DNA of 63,194 nucleotides, filler included, from Platydemus manokwari (lineage: Eukaryota), in NCBI GenBank assembly GCA_037951405.1. It is 5 parts of 5 records of this genome, joined end to end, with 100 filler letters (N's around TTAATTAATTAA, not from the genome) between each part and the next. Parts side by side here need not be neighbours in the genome. Positions count along the whole stretch, not along the records: positions 1 to 17,174 come from JBBMOY011111442.1; 4 more parts are not named here. One strand, given 5' to 3'. Both the position numbers and the translations under genes were made by a program. Positions 770 through 16,280 of this stretch are shown one piece after another; position 1 is the stretch's first letter, and the number at the start of each line of letters is the position of its first letter. The notes below the pieces were generated by a model. That model did not search any database. It saw nothing but the letters and a program-made list of their open reading frames with translations, and had not been told where the DNA came from.

Positions 770-1060
770 TTTAATTACCCCCAAATAGAGAGAAACCCTT
801 TAAATTTTCGTATAACAACTAGAAAATAGCCCCGATTAAAAATACCTTGATACAAAAATAACCCGTATAAAATAAGATCAAAAAATGAAAAACCACCTGC
901 ATTAAAATAAATTACCCGCATCATTTCGGCTAGCAACTGGAAAAAACCCCGAATAAATTAAATATTCTTTAATAAAGAATAAATAACATCAAATTTCGCC
1001 CGCATTAAAAGACTGACAACCCGCAGTGAAGAAATATTCATTTAGATTAAAATGAAAAGA
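770..1060 (+). repeat. Degenerate array of AACCCG(C)ATTAAAA-like motifs, likely transposon subterminal repeats
   Basis: Recurring cccgattaaa / cccgtataaa / cctgcattaaaa / cccgcat / cccgaataaa / cccgcattaaaa at roughly 30-nt spacing. Confidence 0.5.
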
Positions 1061-1129
1061 GCCCTCATTTTAATCGAAAATTACCATCAAATAAATAGGA
1101 CTTTTAAAATCACTAGTCCTGAACCACCC

Positions 1130-1300
1130 GCCTGTTACAAACCCACGTTTGATAGTGTGACCAAGCTAGAAGATTAAGTATTCGTTGCCGAGTTGAAGAA
1201 GCTGATATTCCGTTGCCATTATATGCCCAGAATTGTCTGGAAGAAACGATTTTAATAATTGTTTACCGATTCAATAGGAGATTGCGCAAGGATAAAGTAA
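1130..1300 (+). mobile_element. Ty3/Gypsy gag fragment (decayed)
   Basis: Translates to FVAELKKLIFRCHY, similar to the Gypsy capsid motif F.AELK.LA..C.F; frame broken afterwards. Confidence 0.4.
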
Positions 1301-6170: not shown

Positions 6171-6429
6171 TAAATTGATGTTTCAACAAAATAAGTTATT
6201 ATAACTATTTTCTTTAGCTATCAATCTTAATCATATATAGATAAAAATATTTAAATTATTTAATAATTACTTTATATTAAATAATTTAATAAAAATTTCA
6301 AAATATTAATTTTTTATTTTGAAAATTATTATCAAATTATAAAAATTGTAAATAAATTTTTTTAATAAAAATTTTTTAATAAAATAATTTTTTAATTATT
6401 TTAAATCATTATAAGTTTATTTAAATTTC

Positions 6430-7660
6430 CTTCACATGACTTTCAGTGAGGAGGACATGATAATCATAGATTTGCGTCTTGATATGGCCCATCTTGGTTA
6501 ATGTTTTATTCTTATTAACCATCATAAGCGACAAGCTTCTAATGCCTTTCACATTCATTTCGTTATAGGATTCATTTTTTTCCATGCAATCCAGGTGGTC
6601 ACGTACAAGAGTTGCGTAATCAAGTTGTTAGGTTGTATTTGTTGAAGATTTTGTAATATAGACTCTTGATAAATATTGAGATTACCCAGAGTTAGCTTTC
6701 CCTTTAAGAGCATTGTAAATGACTTTTCCTTTATATTCGGCATTATATAGAATTTTTTCGCTTCATAATGGATCAAGTATTCCTTCACTGAACATTGTCA
6801 CTGTAAGCACTGTCCATAGTTGGTTCCTAACGTTAATAGGAGGTAGTACCGTTTCATATGGAGAAAGTTTCCATGGATTAATTCCAACTTCTGTTAGCCT
6901 GACTCCACTGGCTATTAATTCCGCAATGAAAGATCCAATAAAAATACATCAATTCAGGATGACATAATGTGCGACTATCCAGAGAATTTGGGTATTATCA
7001 CTGTGGACATTGTAGTATCTCTTGATGAGGTCACAGGAGAATCTCATCAACAATCAAATTCTCAAGATATAAAGGACTGAGATAATTATTCATTTTGAGT
7101 TTCAATAGGACTAGACCCTGAAATGATTTATAAGGACTTCCTTTTATCCTTCGAATTATTTTCCATACAGCATGTGGCTTCTCTCTGCATTTTTCCTTGC
7201 ATTAGATCGTTTATTTCCGAGGTTTTCATTGGCGCTTTGGCATTTTTTCCTAATATCAACTTTTTATTTTTTTTCGTTTCAAAGAGTTTGATAAGACGCA
7301 GTAACTCAGGCCTTTTTGAGGTCACAATCACAGTAGAATTTTTCCAATACTTTGGTGTTATCAATCATCTAAATTGCTGGAAGACATGCAATCGAATTGC
7401 TTTTGTTTCTCTCACATTAAGTGTTTAAAGGGATTCATTTGGAGGACTCGTACACTGTCGGAGAAGCAATATGAGTCTGTTCTGAAATGCCTACTATACT
7501 AATTATAGGGCATTTGCATGCTGCCCTATCAGATGCTGTCGAATAAGGTGCCTTCGTGTAGTCATTCGAAATTTGCACTGGGAGATCACTGTTCGAATGA
7601 TTAATGACTGGTTTGTCCAGGTCAACCTCAACATGAGGATTTTCACCTAAAGCTAATAAA
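6430..7660 (-). mobile_element. Probable LINE remnant (ORF1 end / APE endonuclease start)
   Basis: One minus frame with a few stops ends in MNVKGIRS...IYDYHVLLTESHVK, resembling the APE N-terminal motifs NVRGL and YDIL.LTET; truncated at an AT-rich block. Confidence 0.45.
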
Positions 7661-8540: not shown

Positions 8541-11500
8541 ATGGCAACTGATGATCAGGGGAACGAGATTGGGTAATGAATCATTTATAATTATTTATTT
8601 TAATTTTTCTATTTAATACAAATTATTTTGTAGTAAGCTTTTTGTGGGTGGTTTACACCAATCAACTACCAATGGTTGGTTTAAAGTTAAATAATTAATT
8701 AAATTAAAATTAAATTAAGAAACTTTAAAAACTTATTTTGCTAAATTCGGTGAAGTTGTTGAAGCATCAGTGATGATGGATCATAGAACAGGAAGATCAC
8801 GTGGTTTTGGTTATGTACGATATGGGGACAATGAAGCTGTACAAAAGGTTATGTCCACTAAGCATCATTTAGAAGGAAAAGAAATCGATCCAAAACCATG
8901 CAATGTTAACATGAAAGGCAGAGTGAGCGAATAAACTTAAATTTTTTTACATATTTATCAAAATTATAGAGTAGAAGACAATTAAAAATTTTTGTCGGTG
9001 GAATAGCTCCGGAACACAATGAAGAAACTTTGCGTGATTTTTTCAAACAGTTTGGAAATGTATTTTTATTTAATTGTTTTATGTTTTATTAACGATTATT
9101 ATTACTACAGATAACAGAATTAACATTAATGAAAGATCAAAGTGGTCACAGACATCGAGGTGAGTTGTATTCGAATTTATAGTTTATATGTAAATTTCTG
9201 TATCTAATTATTGCTGGATTAGGATTTGTTAGATTTTAATTAAAGTTCTTTAATTTGTTTTTTAATAAATCTAATATTAATAATAATAAATTGTGGTATA
9301 AAATGGTAATAAAAGTAATTTTAATAATGTTTGTGTAATTATTTAATGTTTCATGGTAATTTTATTCAACATAATTAAAGTTGTGCTAATTTTAAATTTA
9401 TGTTAATTATGATTGTGACAAGTCCTGATCCAATTATAAATATTGATAACAGTATTTATGTATATATGTACTGTACTGTAAGCAGTAAGAGTAGCAGTAT
9501 TACATATTGTAGCCATATGTAGTTCTTTACTATTTTACTTAATTGTAAGCATTTAATATTTTTTTACGTAGTGATTACTTTATAGATTCTATTTAAATAT
9601 CAATTTGAAAGAAAAAGATAAGTAGATGTGTTTCAGTTTTTGTTATAAAGTTTATCATTTATAGTTTTATCATGTTATTCTGCTTATTTTCATTTTTACT
9701 GAACATGTATTTTTTGCACAATAATATACACCCATCCACAAATATGTTTGTGCTCTTAAAACTAAATGTCTGCACGTGATTTGAAAAAAACCAGAACCTC
9801 TCCCTCATCCCTCTCGAAAAAAAACTCACAACACAGCTAAACTTAATGCGTTGCTGCAATGATACTCATCGACTGCTTACAGTAACAGTGACAATAAACA
9901 AACACTGATAAACCTTTCGTCACTGTTCAATTACAGGATTCGCATTTGTCGCCTTTGATGATGAAGCTGTCGTGAAGCAACTTATAAATGACCATATTTT
10001 GACAATTGGAAACAAACAGGTTTTAATACACTTTTCATTTTTTATCTATGCTGTACTGCAATTCATGGTGCACTGGTTATCGAGAACATTTTCATCTCAG
10101 AATTAATTATGGTGATAAATATTAATTCACTAGTTAATAATGCAGATGAGACAATATTCTTTGAAATGCGAAGCACCAATGTCAGTGCGGTTTAAGTATA
10201 GAAAACCAGATTTTCTTTAATAATGAATTCTTTATTGTCGTTTTAAATTCAAATTTTTTAGGTTGAAATCAAACCAATGGAACCTCAAGCAAACCGAAAT
10301 AATAATGATATGACCAGCAATAAAAGGGGATTGAGTATGGGTTCAATGCAAGGTTGAAGCTAATACGTTGATAATAATATAATAATTTTTGAAAGGTGGT
10401 CAGTGGCCACAATGGGCCAATCCGAATACTGCTGGTTGGCCTACATCAACTGGTTGGGGTGCATGGCCTCAAGCACCAGGTAATGCAGCAAATGCTCCGA
10501 GCTTATGGGATCAAGGAACTAGTTGGGGAGGAGGTTGGGGAAATAGTATGGGTCAAAATGGTAGCAGTATGAATCAGCATATGGGTCGCGGTCCAGAAAT
10601 GATGGCGAATCCCTGGGAACCTCAAATGTGGAACCCAAATCATATGGCCACATCAGCAATGCAACCCAACCAAGGTAGTAGTAATGGTTGGGGTCCGATG
10701 ACAAATGGTGCGTGGGATCAAGGTCATCCAAACAATCAGTGGAATGCTTTAGGTGGAGGTATGTCAAGTAAAATATAATTTATTCTATAAAATTATTTTT
10801 CCTCTTCGCCAGATGAATGTGAAATATCGAAAAAACGATCTAGTATGTTAATAATAAGTTACAATGTTACAAAATGGCATTAACATTTTTAATTGTAATA
10901 CGTTAATATTTACATATATATTCAATTAATTTATACAATGTTAAACACTGTATATATACCATATTATAATTTAATGAAAATTCACATAAATAATGAAAAT
11001 CTTTTTCATAGCTAGTGACAAAAATCTTGAAGAAAATTATTCTAACATTACTTTAGCAATTATCTGGCGTCAGTTGGTTTTCATTGACATTATTTGACAG
11101 TTGCGTAATTTTTATTTTTCAAATTAACCTTTGAATATATAGATAAACTATTGTAATCATTTACAACGTTTTTATATCAGATAAAATTCGAACAGGTTGA
11201 TAATTTTAAAAGCAAATTTATTTCTTGAAGTTTATTTTAACTTCTATGTAGACGTTAATTTCAAACCTGTTCATTTGCTATCATTATATTTTTTTATGGA
11301 GAGTTATTGTGTTTTCTTGAAATATTTTAATAAATTTGATCTTTTAGGCTTAATAGTTACTTGAGTAAATTACAGCAAATAGCAAAACTTCTCAGAAACG
11401 TATCATGGTGATTCAAAATTAACGTTTATATAAATTAATAGAAAGGTGTTATTGGAGTTTGGAAAAGGTATAATATCAATTTAATTTGTAATTTAAATGT

Positions 11501-12310
11501 ATTTTTTACTAATCGTGATTATATTATTGATTGGTCAAACTTTTGAAATTAAGTAATTTTGTGAATATTTTAAGCAAAGTTCATTTTTAAGAATTTTTCC
11601 GATAATTTTTACTCAATACTTAATATTCTCTAAATATAAATATATAGCTTGTTAAAGTAATAATTATATATTCCGAATAGAGTTTATTCAAAATATTTTA
11701 CAAATTTCAATGAAAAATAACAACTTAAGTTTCTCATGAGTTACAGTGGGTACAAATTTCAGATCATAATACTTAATTTTATAAATTTGTTATTCATAAT
11801 GTGTATAATTGATGCTCAATTTCAATCTTTGCCAATGATTAAAAACATTGATTGACCATGATTCGTTGTCGCATTATTGTTTTCATCCAAGAAGTTAAGC
11901 TGGTAGGCACAAATTATGGATATAAATAAATTTATTTGCTATATGCAGTCATAGCTTACAATTTGTTTTTTTTTATCAAGTAAGCTTTTTCTTTAAAAAC
12001 ATTTGAACATGTTTTTCGTCGATGTAAAATTATGTTCGAAAGTACTTTATGTCCTGACATTAAAAACATTTTAATTATTACTATAATTAACATTACAATT
12101 AATTTTGTATCAATGCCATGTTAATCGAATATATTAAGTTGCTTGTTTCAGTTGTTGTATTTATAATTTTAAAATTTAAGTTACGTGTATTATTTAGGAT
12201 TCAGTATGCAGACCAATTCGGCAAATGATTGGAGATCAAGTATTTCAAATGGTATGAACCCAAATGCAGGACCAATGCATGGGCAGTCTTTTGCTGCTTT
12301 TAAAAGATGA
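8541..12310 (+). CDS. DAZAP1: DAZAP1/Hrp48(Hrb27C)/Musashi-family two-RRM RNA-binding protein, ~354 aa; exons 8541-8572, 8634-8674, 8720-8922, 8970-9059, 9111-9159, 9937-10019, 10262-10352, 10396-10758, 12198-12310
   Basis: Spliced frame MATDDQGNEIGKLFVGGL...RSRGFGYV...IDPKPC...KIFVGGI...RHRGFAFVAF...VEIKPMEP; EIGKLFVGGL and IDPKPC are typical of DAZAP1; all introns GT-AG with consistent phases (1065 nt CDS). Confidence 0.9.
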
Positions 12311-13172: not shown

Positions 13173-14299
13173 TATCATTGATAGAATACAATTTTGGTCT
13201 TAAATTCTATGTATTTTTTTCAATTTGACAACGTATCAACTACATTAATCAAAACTTCAGATTTCATGATTGATAACTTTAAAAACTGGTTCATGATTTT
13301 AAACTTTTATCTCGTTTTTACAAATATTTTGTAGGAAATATTAATTTCGTCAAAAATCTTGTCTTTGTAATAATTTATTTTTTCCCAGAAATTTTTTTCA
13401 ATATTTTGATTTAAGATTTCTATTAATCAAGTGAAATCTGATATATACATTGGAAATGTTCGTGGTCTAAATTTTTAAAATTACACTCCATTGGCATAAA
13501 GTGAAATGGAAATGTTACATTTTGTAATTTTCTTTTTAAAAGAATTGCTTTTTATTTTATATTTGTTACATGTTTACTCACTCCTTAACATTTTCGTCCC
13601 AAAAATTCGTGTGTATTTACAACATTCAATATCATTCACCACGAAGTCTACGTGCATGAAATGTTTGTAAACTCAGTTGGAGTATAGGACAAGTCAAATG
13701 AACACACAATATTGAGTCAATTACTGATCGATTGATTATACCTATTCTCTTCTTCATTTTGATTTTAAATACAAGTGAAATTGCAAAAATTTGCCATTTA
13801 ATTTCTCACAATTAGCATTATTTTTCGTTATTATAGTGAAAGATAAGATACGATTGAATACACTGGTTGGATGTACTGATATCAAATATTATATTAACTG
13901 ATATGATCATCTTGATTGTCTGCTATCCTTCTGCTTTTCTGTTTTAGTGTCTACTTAAATGTTTGATAATTGTCCACCAGGACCTTCTCTTTACAAATAA
14001 TTTTTTTCTTAATCGGATTTTATATTCGTTGGCCAAGAATTGAGAGTCATTTTTATAAAATTCTTCTCGTTCTTTTATGTTGTTAGATTCTTCTTGTTTT
14101 CCCTGATATGTCAATGTGATAGGATTTGTCTGATTTGGTCCGTTTTATTTCTTATAATATGGCTGATTGATTTTCTTTCTTCTGTATTCGTTCGGTTTTT
14201 AAGATTTCTCGAGATAACAGTTCCGCGAGCAGAACTGTGCAAGGTAGCAAAAATTAGACCAAGGCACCAATCGACCCGTTCTAGAGAATAGTCTAAAAA

Positions 14300-16280
14300 G
14301 CAATAGGAAAAGATAAAATATTTCCGACTACGAAACCTCCACTAATTAGGAGAGGTTTTATGATTATAACTAAGTAAAAATGGTTTTGATCCTATAGTTT
14401 TTTAGCCTGGTTTTCTCCAGAAAGAGATTAAATTGATTTTTTAAAACCTTTGAAAAAAGGTAGAAATCAATCGACAGTAATCAACAATTTTATGTTCAAG
14501 CAACTAGAAGCCCAAACAATCAATCAAGCATTAAAAAATTTAAGAAATTCCAATTGCTTGAGAACAAGTAGCAGAATGACTTAATAATGAGAAAATCAAA
14601 TAAATATTTGAGTAAAAATTCTTAATAGGCTTTCAGGTCGCAGATATAATTAAGGCATGATTTTTTTCCACTTATTGTATCATGGGAATTCGAGATTTAT
14701 CAACGGAAGAATGTCTGGTCAAATATAAAATCTACGATAAACTACCAGTCAGACTAAAAAGTGTGATGAAGAAGGTATTGTCAAAGTACCATTTAAGAAA
14801 ATTCACGAACTGGAAACAGGTTGAGCCGATAAGATAAATAAATTTAATGATCGAAAATTAATGTAGCCTATCAGCTAAAACTAGTCAATCAATTCCAGAC
14901 TATGAATCTGTAGATCTCGATGCAGAAGTAGTAAAAATCAAGCTGGGCAGAGAAATAAACGATCCATCGCCAAGAAAGAGCAAACAAGGATCAAGTTCAA
15001 TACAAGAAATGCAGAACAAAGCATTTAAATAGCAAAATGGTGATATACCTCAATTGAGAGGAGAAAAGGCACTGTATTTGTCTCAGAATATTTTGATCGT
15101 AGTAGAAAGTAAGACATGGCACATTACTGCCATCCTCAAAACCAATGAAGCAGACCTCGACGAATTATGTCTCGACTTTAGCAACCTAGAACTCAAAAAT
15201 GTAAAAGCAAGGTTCAGCAATACAACTACCAATAACAATGACTGATGCTGACATATCTTTAATCATTATATATCATTTATTTACTCTATGACGCATGACT
15301 TATTGTTATAATGAGCTTTTTCTTAAAGTGTTATATTTACTAATTCGTTATAAAATTATCAATAAACTATTCAATTAATAATTATAACAAATAAACAGAG
15401 GATAACTAAAATTAAACTTAAAAATGTAAATTCTCAATATAATGTGCAATATATCGATTACGGTATACATAATGTTATCATCTTTAGAAATGATTTTATT
15501 ATTTAGAATTAAAGTTACATATCCACCTGCTGGACTCATTCTCATTACTGTTCCTAACTTTGCCAGCTATCCGTTCGACACTGTCATCAGTAATAATTTC
15601 CATTCATACATGGAACAAGAGTGTCGGACTACTGTAATTTCAAGAACCAAACGTTCCTAACTAATAATATTAAATTTCCTGGTAGAGGATGTCATCTTGT
15701 CAAGCACAGAGAACTCAACAAACTACTCCCATATTACTTATGTACCCAGAGCAGAAAGCATGCATTAAATAGATCATAGCTGCAATTACAATCCATTTCC
15801 GTGGATCTAAAGAAGCAATTTTCTTACCAAGGAATCAGGCCTGGGAGATCACAAATTATGATGAAAGGCTTCTTTTTACTTTCACATCATTGGCGAATAC
15901 AGTTATCCTGGAAACTAATCGTAACGACACTCCAGCTAATGAAAAATATCTTTATCTACACCCGGACTATACTTACCTCGATAACGGAGAAGCAATATTA
16001 AATAAGTTAACGTTTATCAGAAGACATATATTGTCATATTATCGAGATGTGTCTCAAAATATCTTAAAGGTAAAGATTCGGCTTCTAGAGTTGAAGTTTG
16101 CAACCGTTTTCTTTCCAGAAGTTGTAGGTATCATCATCTAGGTCATTTTATTAGCAGTATATTGTAGTATTAAACAAAACCTTTTTATAATTGTACAATT
16201 GTATTGTTGTTGTATCATTTAATAATCAATAAACGTTATCGTAAACGTGAATCATTGTGTTGTTGACTAGATAGGTTCAT
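14300..16280 (+). mobile_element. Heavily decayed transposon-derived coding sequence, possibly Gypsy pol plus LTR
   Basis: Broken coding-like stretches (e.g. ITVPNFASYPFDTV, reminiscent of integrase P..PF..V..D) followed by an LTR-like segment with AATAAA ending in tcatca at ~16282. Confidence 0.3.

What the first reader, a model, noticed from the sequence alone, without database searches (positions are those of the whole stretch)
9467..9936. Long-range and competing RNA duplexes at the 3' splice site of DAZAP1 intron 5
Seen: tactgtaagcagt (9474-9486) is a perfect 13-bp complement of actgcttacagta (9872-9884), extendable across one bulge. Nested inside are gagta/tactc (9489-93/9863-67), attgtagc/gctgcaat (9506-13/9853-60) and gtagatgt/atgtctgc (9622-29/9766-73), with deviations mainly G-U. 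The end of the 3' arm (aacagtgac 9884-9892) can instead pair perfectly with gtcactgtt (9919-9927), enclosing a putative branch point (ctgat) next to the acceptor at 9936. This intron is 777 nt, whereas five others in the gene are 43-61 nt, and it carries several (G/A)UAG motifs of the kind Musashi/DAZAP RRMs bind. Inference: a structural splice switch for autoregulation.
Basis: partly seen in the sequence, partly recalled or inferred. Interest (0 to 1): 0.7.

Follow-up and report, generated by a model that had tools for sequence, protein, structure and literature searches.

The report
Inverted repeat in planarian DAZAP intron
A long intron of a flatworm RNA-binding-protein gene (DAZAP) carries a real, single-copy inverted repeat that should zip about 360 bases of the unspliced RNA into a loop next to the 3' splice site. 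Nothing testable here shows it is a regulatory switch rather than a passive fold-back.

Summary
The sequence facts hold. A perfect 13-bp complement (9474-9486 / 9872-9884) sits inside an imperfect inverted repeat of about 50-58 bp (9441-9514 / 9835-9932, -48 kcal/mol).

It is beyond chance. No shuffle of the intron (0 of 193) comes within 10 kcal/mol. No other non-coding pair in about 40 kb of this genome comes within 6 kcal/mol. It is single-copy in the 911-Mb assembly, so it is not a multicopy MITE.

The gene is the planarian DAZAP orthologue, about 85% identical to S. mediterranea "DAZ-associated protein 2". A relative's mRNA confirms the exon 5/6 junction.

Several supporting claims fail:
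- Intron 5 is not the only long intron; there are also introns of 242 and 1439 nt.
- (G/A)UAG motifs are not enriched.
- G-U pairs are not strand-biased, and the minus strand folds as well.
- One nested helix has zero predicted probability.

The competing 9-bp helix is nearly isoenergetic with the outer stem (about 1 kcal/mol) and would expose the putative branch point. That result is in silico only.

Conservation and RNA evidence could not be obtained.

Best reading: a locus-specific DNA-level inverted repeat carried in a long intron. It may help compact the intron. An autoregulatory role is unsupported.

The parts
9111..9159 (+). Exon 5 of the DAZAP orthologue (…ITELTLMKDQSGHRHR, plus the first base of a Gly codon)
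   Evidence: Translation. The junction to exon 6 is the same as in the relative's spliced mRNA L011.
9160..9936 (+). Intron 5, 777 nt, GT..AG, phase 1
   Evidence: MFE -152.5 kcal/mol; z = -3.2 with 20 shuffles and -2.7 with 150 shuffles, none as stable.
9215..9432 (+). Hairpin I: an AT-rich fold-back of about 84 bp in the 5' half of the intron, separate from the reported repeat
   Evidence: Present in the MFE and centroid structures. Mean pair probability 0.86. z = -3.9 on the + strand (16 G-U pairs) and -3.2 on the - strand (3 G-U pairs). Only low-complexity matches elsewhere in the genome.
9441..9514 (+). 5' arm of the inverted repeat. The DNA-level alignable part is 9447-9496; the RNA duplex runs to 9513.
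   Evidence: RNAduplex 9441-9514 / 9835-9932: 58 bp, -48.4 kcal/mol. DNA alignment 42 of 54 columns. Single copy in the genome.
9474..9486 (+). Perfect 13-nt core, 5' copy
   Evidence: Pair probability 0.95-1.0 for 12 of 13 pairs. The 13-mer is not enriched genome-wide: 19 hits against 41 for the reversed control.
9515..9834 (+). Looped-out interior, about 320 nt, with a C-rich stretch at 9790-9835
   Evidence: No Rfam match at E<=5, no tRNA, single copy. The 66-aa minus-strand ORF 9659-9859 has no Pfam match.
9835..9910 (+). 3' arm of the inverted repeat. The DNA-level alignable part is 9860-9910.
   Evidence: Single copy.
9872..9884 (+). Perfect 13-nt core, 3' copy
9884..9892 (+). End of the 3' arm. 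It can pair either with 9467-9473 (outer stem) or with 9919-9927.
   Evidence: Probability about 0.74 for the outer stem and about 0.25 for the alternative. The constrained ensembles differ by about 1 kcal/mol.
9906..9910 (+). Putative branch point CUGAU (fits YURAY), with its A 27 nt upstream of the acceptor
   Evidence: Read from the sequence. Exposure depends on the modelled state. The branch point has not been mapped.
9919..9927 (+). Competitor strand gtcactgtt. It pairs with 9884-9892 (perfect 9 bp) or with 9901-9909, which covers the branch point.
9937..10019 (+). Exon 6 (…FAFVAFDDEAVVKQLINDHILTIGNKQ)
10045..10202 (+). Fold-back hairpin filling most of the 242-nt intron 6 (10020-10261)
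   Evidence: Whole intron z = -3.0, with 1 of 200 shuffles as stable. Hairpin z = -4.8 on + and -2.5 on -. Single copy.

Best explanation
This is a locus-specific, imperfect inverted repeat at the DNA level. The arms are about 50-58 bp (9441-9514 / 9835-9932) with a perfect 13-bp core. It most likely arose by a local inverted duplication or as the decayed ends of an old single fold-back insertion, and it is carried inside one of the three long introns of the planarian DAZAP orthologue. In the pre-mRNA the arms should pair stably and loop out about 360 nt. Together with hairpin I (9215-9432), this leaves roughly 95-130 nt of intron 5 outside stable helices. I take that as a passive, tolerated consequence, at most mildly helpful for bringing the splice sites together, and not as a regulated switch.

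Shown: the repeat, its stability, its non-random nature, its single-copy status, and the lack of strand bias.
Inferred: its origin and its lack of a specific regulatory function.
For: - The repeat is real and stable. The 13-bp helix has a probability of about 1.0, and forcing the 5' arm open costs 14.8 kcal/mol.
- It is beyond chance.
- It is equally good on both strands: -48.4 kcal/mol on + and -52.2 on -, with 4 and 6 G-U pairs. That is what a DNA-level repeat gives, not a sense-RNA-selected helix.
- Differences between the arms are mostly transversions and indels, not wobble-preserving transitions.
- Fold-back segments of unrelated sequence occur about every 2.6 kb in this window, inside and outside the gene (z-scan; no shared sequence). 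Such structures are therefore part of this genome's non-coding texture.
- Planarian genes normally mix introns of 45-85 nt with a broad tail of long ones (PMC13594981), so a 777-nt intron needs no special explanation.
- The relative's mRNA (L011) shows ordinary removal of this intron.
Against: - No second copy or family exists that would document a transposon origin, and no clear target-site duplication was seen.
- The repeat abuts the putative branch point and 3' splice site. The alternative 9-bp helix is nearly isoenergetic and changes predicted branch-point exposure. That would be a coincidence under a purely passive reading.
- The two neighbouring hairpins (hairpin I and the intron 6 hairpin) are more stable and more significant on the sense strand, which hints at RNA-level constraint in these introns.
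- The strand-symmetry test on the repeat has low power, because there are few differences.
Confidence: 0.5

Rival explanations
1. Constitutive intron compaction. The inverted repeat, hairpin I and the intron 6 hairpin are maintained because they fold away the excess length of long introns. The 5' splice site, branch point and 3' splice site then lie within the range handled by intron-definition splicing, which dominates in planarians.
For: - All the excess length of introns 5 and 6 falls into three high-probability fold-backs.
- About 95-130 nt of 777 and about 85 nt of 242 remain outside them.
- Hairpin I and the intron 6 hairpin are favoured on the sense strand: z -3.9 against -3.2, and -4.8 against -2.5; G-U pairs 16 against 3, and 7 against 1.
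- Planarians have a short-intron peak of 45-85 nt and probably intron-defined splicing (PMC13594981).
- Stems that bridge intron ends are known to aid splicing in yeast and Drosophila (PMC2724269, PMC10726166; the yeast RPS17B case is from my own knowledge).
Against: - The 1439-nt intron 8 of the same gene is mostly unstructured. 240-nt windows have z near 0, except 11041 (-3.1) and 10801 (-2.1).
- The end-to-end path in the MFE structure is no shorter than in shuffles: 13 against 19.5 +/- 10.8 for intron 5, and 46 against 17.8 for intron 6.
- The repeat itself shows no sense-strand bias.
- Equally strong fold-backs occur outside the gene.
- A sense-strand G-U excess can also come from transcription-associated mutation bias.
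Confidence: 0.25
2. One reading: a structural splice switch for autoregulation. DAZAP protein binding, or helix competition, shifts the end of the 3' arm between the long-range stem and the local 9-bp helix. This hides or exposes the branch point and sets the amount of productive mRNA.
For: - The two states differ by about 1 kcal/mol, and branch-point exposure changes from 0.07-0.33 to 0.88-0.98.
- The gene encodes a splicing-regulating hnRNP-type protein, a class in which autoregulation through splicing is common (hnRNP A2/B1 in PMC3091714, FUS in PMC7337901, the RPL22 intron switch in PMC13630204).
- Competing long-range helices that control splicing are known (ATE1, PMC7797038).
Against: - (G/A)UAG and Musashi-type motifs are not enriched.
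- There is no strand bias and no evidence of an alternative isoform. The relative's transcript and the S. mediterranea and D. japonica proteins show only the normal junction.
- The 9-bp competitor is one of several ACAGT/ACTGT-type repeats in the arms, so it may be a by-product of the repeat.
- The branch point is only a consensus match.
Confidence: 0.1
3. A MITE or other multicopy transposon with terminal inverted repeats, inserted in the intron.
For: The architecture fits: imperfect terminal repeats of about 50 bp flank about 360 nt of non-coding DNA, about 470 nt in all.
Against: - The whole element, each arm, and a 27-mer with up to 3 mismatches occur once in 911 Mb.
- The 13-mer core is not enriched: 19 hits against 41 for the control.
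- No target-site duplication is recognisable.
- Caveat: the assembly is very fragmented (about 2 million contigs), and the search is not exhaustive.
Confidence: 0.05
4. The repeat flanks and helps process an unrecognised intron-hosted small RNA, or is itself a dsRNA substrate.
For: Introns of RNA-binding-protein genes often host small RNAs. The stem has about 25 bp of nearly continuous duplex.
Against: No Rfam family matches at E<=5 and no tRNA was found. The interior is unique and AT-rich, with no strong local fold: 240-nt windows have z between -0.8 and 0.1 across 9441-9841. No small-RNA data are available.
Confidence: 0.05
5. A chance complementarity in AT-rich sequence.
For: Three other perfect repeats of 13 nt or more lie within 800 nt of each other in the window. 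The DNA-level alignment score is reached in 27% of shuffled 17-kb windows.
Against: The other perfect repeats are pure A/T. By duplex energy this one lies 10 kcal/mol beyond the best of 193 shuffles, and beyond everything non-coding in about 40 kb of the genome.
Confidence: 0.05

Closest known systems
Long-range intronic complementary regions associated with splicing (Drosophila conserved intronic pairs, PMC2724269; human PCCR catalogue, PMC8052449)
   Same: Two complementary boxes hundreds of nucleotides apart in one intron, forming a stable helix that loops out intronic sequence close to a splice site.
   Different: Those are defined by conservation or compensatory change across species, and some by mutagenesis. 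Here neither could be tested, and the duplex lacks sense-strand bias.
Competing RNA structures controlling splicing (ATE1 R1-R5, PMC7797038; Dscam1 docking/selector pairs, PMC12962786)
   Same: One strand (9884-9892) has two mutually exclusive partners, and the choice affects a splicing signal in the model.
   Different: The known cases choose between mutually exclusive exons and are conserved and validated by mutation. Here there is no alternative exon, no isoform evidence and no conservation data.
Autoregulated RNA-binding-protein genes (hnRNP A2/B1 by alternative splicing coupled to NMD, PMC3091714; FUS by intron retention, PMC7337901; yeast RPL22 intron switch, PMC13630204)
   Same: The host gene is an hnRNP-class splicing regulator with a structured intron.
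   Different: There are no enriched binding motifs, no retained-intron or NMD isoform, and no reported DAZAP1 autoregulation in the papers I found.
Intron-bridging stems that aid splicing in yeast (RPS17B/RP51B 5'ss-branch point pairing, from my own knowledge; random-insert study PMC10726166)
   Same: The helix shortens the effective distance between intron ends.
   Different: [quoted passage not shown] Here the 5' arm lies about 290 nt into the intron, and a second hairpin is needed to close the gap.
MITEs / fold-back transposons
   Same: Imperfect terminal inverted repeats around a short non-coding core, sitting in an intron.
   Different: Single copy, no family, and no target-site duplication.

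Membership tests
MITE / fold-back transposable element | Many related copies in the genome | tested here: not met
   One copy of the element, of each arm, and of a 27-mer with up to 3 mismatches in 911 Mb. The 13-mer core gives 19 hits against 41 for the control.
MITE / fold-back transposable element | Terminal inverted repeats bounding a short (<800 bp) non-coding element | tested here: met
   Arms 9447-9496 / 9860-9910 match in 42 of 54 columns. The element is about 470 nt.
MITE / fold-back transposable element | Target-site duplication flanking the repeats | tested here: inconclusive
   Reading the flanks shows no convincing duplication. Only trivial A/T di- or trinucleotides match, and the ends of the repeat are not sharply defined.
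Functional long-range RNA structure (conserved complementary regions) | Stable complementarity beyond chance | tested here: met
   -48.4 kcal/mol; 0 of 193 shuffles within 10 kcal/mol; nothing comparable in 23.5 kb of other loci.
Functional long-range RNA structure (conserved complementary regions) | Conservation or compensatory substitutions in orthologous introns | not testable with these tools
Functional long-range RNA structure (conserved complementary regions) | Sense-strand specificity (wobble pairs tolerated on the transcribed strand only) | tested here: not met
   + strand -48.4 kcal/mol with 4 G-U pairs; - strand -52.2 with 6 G-U pairs.
Autoregulatory splice switch of an RNA-binding protein | Mutually exclusive helices of similar stability that change access to a splice signal | tested here: met
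   In silico only. Ensemble free energies are -199.9 and -198.9. The branch point is 0.07-0.33 unpaired in one state and 0.88-0.98 in the other.
Autoregulatory splice switch of an RNA-binding protein | Enriched binding sites for the protein's own RRMs in the regulated intron | tested here: not met
   RTAG 8 against 6.0 +/- 2.2 (P = 0.24). The Musashi-type motif gives 4 against 5.1. AAAUAG/GUAACG gives 0.
Autoregulatory splice switch of an RNA-binding protein | An unproductive isoform (retained intron or poison exon) that responds to protein level | not testable with these tools
   No RNA run holds the locus. The relative's transcript shows only the productive junction.
DAZAP1 / hnRNP 27C family (host gene) | Two N-terminal RRMs of the hnRNP A/B-D/DAZAP1 type, with closest named relatives being DAZAP proteins | tested here: met
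   RRM_1 in exons 3 and 4. PDB matches are Hrp1, hnRNP DL, hnRNP A1 and DAZAP1. About 85% identity to S. mediterranea DAZ-associated protein 2, and in the same 90% cluster as D. japonica DAZAP.

The most novel reading that the evidence does not exclude
The fold-backs are selected RNA elements. Long introns of this planarian gene, and perhaps of planarian genes generally, would be kept spliceable by sense-strand hairpins and long-range stems that collapse them to short-intron size. In DAZAP intron 5 the last layer of the stem would double as a two-state gate on the branch point, tuning productive splicing of this splicing regulator.
Probability: 0.1. Interest if true: 0.6.

Novelty: new member of a known kind. 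Interest (0 to 1): 0.28.

Why it matters
If the stem were shown to be conserved and to gate the branch point, it would be a first worked example of RNA-structure control of splicing in a planarian. It would also give a handle on how intron-defined spliceosomes cope with long introns. As it stands, it is a well-documented but ordinary intronic inverted repeat. Its main value is as a precise, cheap test case: three arms and one branch point, to be checked in the S. mediterranea and D. japonica DAZAP loci and in planarian RNA-seq.

Tried and rejected
- Simple helix scoring (+3/+2/+1, mismatch -3) did not discriminate in AT-rich sequence. Shuffles scored higher than the real intron, so I dropped it in favour of duplex energies.
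- The end-to-end path in the MFE structure as a measure of 'compaction' is uninformative, because shuffles also close their ends.
Its contigs are identical to the window, with no polymorphism in the arms.
The metagenome scan gave a spliced mRNA only. The listing of cluster members gave no accession for those contigs.
- The search of earlier findings was not open.
- Rfam, tRNA and Pfam scans of the intron interior were blank.
- No sequence similarity was found among the window's fold-back modules.
- Neighbouring ORFs have no Pfam hits.
Exons were searched one by one by reference, and the uninterrupted ORF of locus L011 served as the full-length query.
- I ran no further search on the spurious intronic ORF, or use the large representative search. 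A blank would have said nothing.
Full report
**The observation**

- The repeat finder reports the 13-nt, 100% complementary pair 9474-9486 / 9872-9884, with 385 nt between the arms.
- RNAduplex extends it to 58 base pairs between 9441-9514 and 9835-9932. These are 20 G-C, 34 A-U and 4 G-U pairs, at -48.4 kcal/mol.
- At the DNA level, 9447-9496 aligns with the reverse complement of 9860-9910 in 42 of 54 columns.
- In the partition function of the intron with flanking exon sequence, 12 of the 13 core pairs have a probability of 0.95-1.0.
- The other helices have these probabilities: outer extension about 0.7, gagta/tactc 0.69, attgtagc/gctgcaat 0.3, the alternative 9-bp helix 9884-92 / 9919-27 0.25, and gtagatgt/atgtctgc 0.
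- Forcing the 5' arm open costs 14.8 kcal/mol of ensemble free energy.

**Is it more than chance?**

- Four perfect inverted repeats of 13 nt or more lie within 800 nt of each other in the window. The other three are pure A/T.
- By duplex energy of 60-nt windows, the pair ranks second of 11,090 in the 17 kb (mean -12.8, sd 4.6). It is beaten only by a pair inside the repetitive G/W-rich coding exon 8.
- Shuffles of the intron never come close: the best of 193 is -31.1 against -41.5 observed, and a Gumbel extrapolation gives about 1e-4.
- In 23.5 kb of other loci of the same AT-rich genome, no pair reaches -35.
- A plain DNA alignment score is weaker evidence: 1.7% of intron shuffles reach it, and so do 27% of whole-window shuffles.
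- I conclude that the repeat is real. It arose by descent or selection, not by accident.

**The gene**

- Exons 3 and 4 carry RRM_1. The nearest solved structures are Hrp1, hnRNP DL, hnRNP A1 and DAZAP1.
- A metagenome scan returned L011, a 1230-nt spliced mRNA of a relative.
- The 354-aa ORF of L011 is 86% identical to S. mediterranea 'DAZ-associated protein 2'. It clusters with D. japonica DAZAP.
- The window's exons are about 85% identical to the S. mediterranea protein and not identical to either named protein. The window therefore comes from another triclad.
- L011 confirms every junction, including exon 5/6.
- L011 also shows that the apparent stop at 10776 lies in an intron. There is a ninth exon at 12198-12310 and an intron 8 of 1439 nt, at 10759-12197.
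- The intron lengths are thus 61, 45, 47, 51, 777, 242, 43 and 1439 nt.
- Planarian genes typically combine a peak of 45-85-nt introns with a broad tail of long ones (PMC13594981). Intron 5 is therefore not exceptional.

**Transposon test**

- The 501-nt region, each arm separately, and a 27-mer of the 5' arm with up to three mismatches each occur once in the 911-Mb assembly.
- The 13-mer core occurs 19 times, against 41 for its reversed control.
- No target-site duplication is evident.
The caveat is that the assembly has about 2 million contigs.

**RNA-level or DNA-level?**

- The duplex is as good on the minus strand (-52.2 kcal/mol, 6 G-U) as on the plus strand (-48.4, 4 G-U).
- The differences between the arms are mostly transversions and indels.
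- That is the signature of a DNA-level repeat, not of a helix maintained in the sense RNA. With so few differences, though, the test is weak.

**The switch**

- When the outer stem layer is forced, the ensemble free energy is -199.9 kcal/mol. The putative branch point CUGAU (9906-9910) is then mostly paired with 9919-9927, and is unpaired with probability 0.07-0.33.
- When the 9-bp alternative is forced, the free energy is -198.9 and the branch point is 0.88-0.98 unpaired.
- However, the competitor is one of several ACAGT/ACTGT-type repeats in and around the arms. The branch point is only a consensus match. (G/A)UAG and related motifs are not enriched: 8 against 6.0 +/- 2.2.

**Surroundings**

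- A 240-nt z-score scan of 15.8 kb gives a mean z of -0.19 and an sd of 1.25. About six loci fall below -3.
- Three of those six lie in this gene's introns: hairpin I at 9215-9432, the intron 6 hairpin at 10045-10202, and 11041 in intron 8. Three lie elsewhere, near 881-1200, 6241 and 14241.
- These modules share no sequence, and the two that were tested are single-copy.
- Hairpin I and the intron 6 hairpin are more stable and more significant on the sense strand: z -3.9 against -3.2, and -4.8 against -2.5; G-U pairs 16 against 3, and 7 against 1.
- That could reflect RNA-level constraint or transcription-associated mutation bias.
- Intron 8 is mostly unstructured. This argues against a general need to fold long introns away.

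**What could not be tested**

- No RNA run holds the locus, and the only run is the source DNA, identical to the window.
- No genomic DNA of a relative was reachable.
- Covariation and intron retention, the two decisive tests, remain open.

**Verdict**

[quoted passage not shown] My ranking of the readings is:
- a locus-specific DNA-level repeat carried passively in a long intron: 0.5;
- a constitutive intron-compacting element: 0.25;

The structure belongs to a known kind, intronic long-range complementarity (PMC2724269, PMC8052449, PMC7797038).

Noticed in passing
window 10759-12310: The gene has a ninth exon (12198-12310, stop at 12308-12310) and a 1439-nt intron 8 (10759-12197). The apparent stop at 10776-10778 is intronic. 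This is shown by alignment to the relative's mRNA L011 and to the S. mediterranea protein.
   Followed up: yes
window 10045-10202 (intron 6): Most of the 242-nt intron 6 is one long hairpin. Whole-intron z is -3.0. The hairpin has z = -4.8 on the sense strand and -2.5 on the antisense strand, with 7 against 1 G-U pairs. It is single copy in the genome.
   Followed up: partly
window 9215-9432 (intron 5, 5' half): A separate AT-rich fold-back of about 84 bp (mean pair probability 0.86, z = -3.9), with 16 G-U pairs on the sense strand against 3 on the antisense strand.
   Followed up: partly
window 9153-9163 and 9949-9960: In the exon5-intron5-exon6 fold, the end of exon 5 plus the first four intron bases pair with exon 6 sequence 13-24 nt past the acceptor, with probability about 0.9. 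The 5' splice site is therefore predicted to be paired. This may be an ordinary end-closing helix. The exonic parts are conserved in L011, as expected for RNP1 codons.
   Followed up: no
window 9263-9330: An AT-rich low-complexity stretch matches tandem AT-rich repeats on other contigs (78-82% identity). It shows a depth spike in the source run: 173 against about 13-20.
   Followed up: no
window 6240-6430: An AT-rich palindromic region with a perfect 15-bp inverted repeat (6251-6265 / 6275-6289) and self-complementarity of 145-186 nt at about 70%. It lies between minus-strand ORFs and may be an intron of a neighbouring gene.
   Followed up: no
window 881-1200 and 14241-14640: Two further segments with strongly negative folding z-scores (-3.3 to -4.1), stronger on the + strand. 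Their gene context is unknown.
   Followed up: no
G000:C303336:5330-5851 (L092): A 57%-identical paralogue of the two-RRM region lies in one uninterrupted 434-aa open frame on a contig of the same AT-rich composition. It is either an intronless paralogue or a retrogene. Several other RRM matches in the assembly are also intronless.
   Followed up: no
P0001 (Logan contig, 1077 nt) and P0002 (ENA contig, 7328 nt): Gene calls on genomic contigs of two relatives read through introns. P0001 (95% identical in exon 3) has a diverged, in-frame intron 3. P0002 (64% identical) lacks intron 3 but keeps intron 4. These contigs would hold the orthologous intron 5 region but could not be fetched.
   Followed up: no
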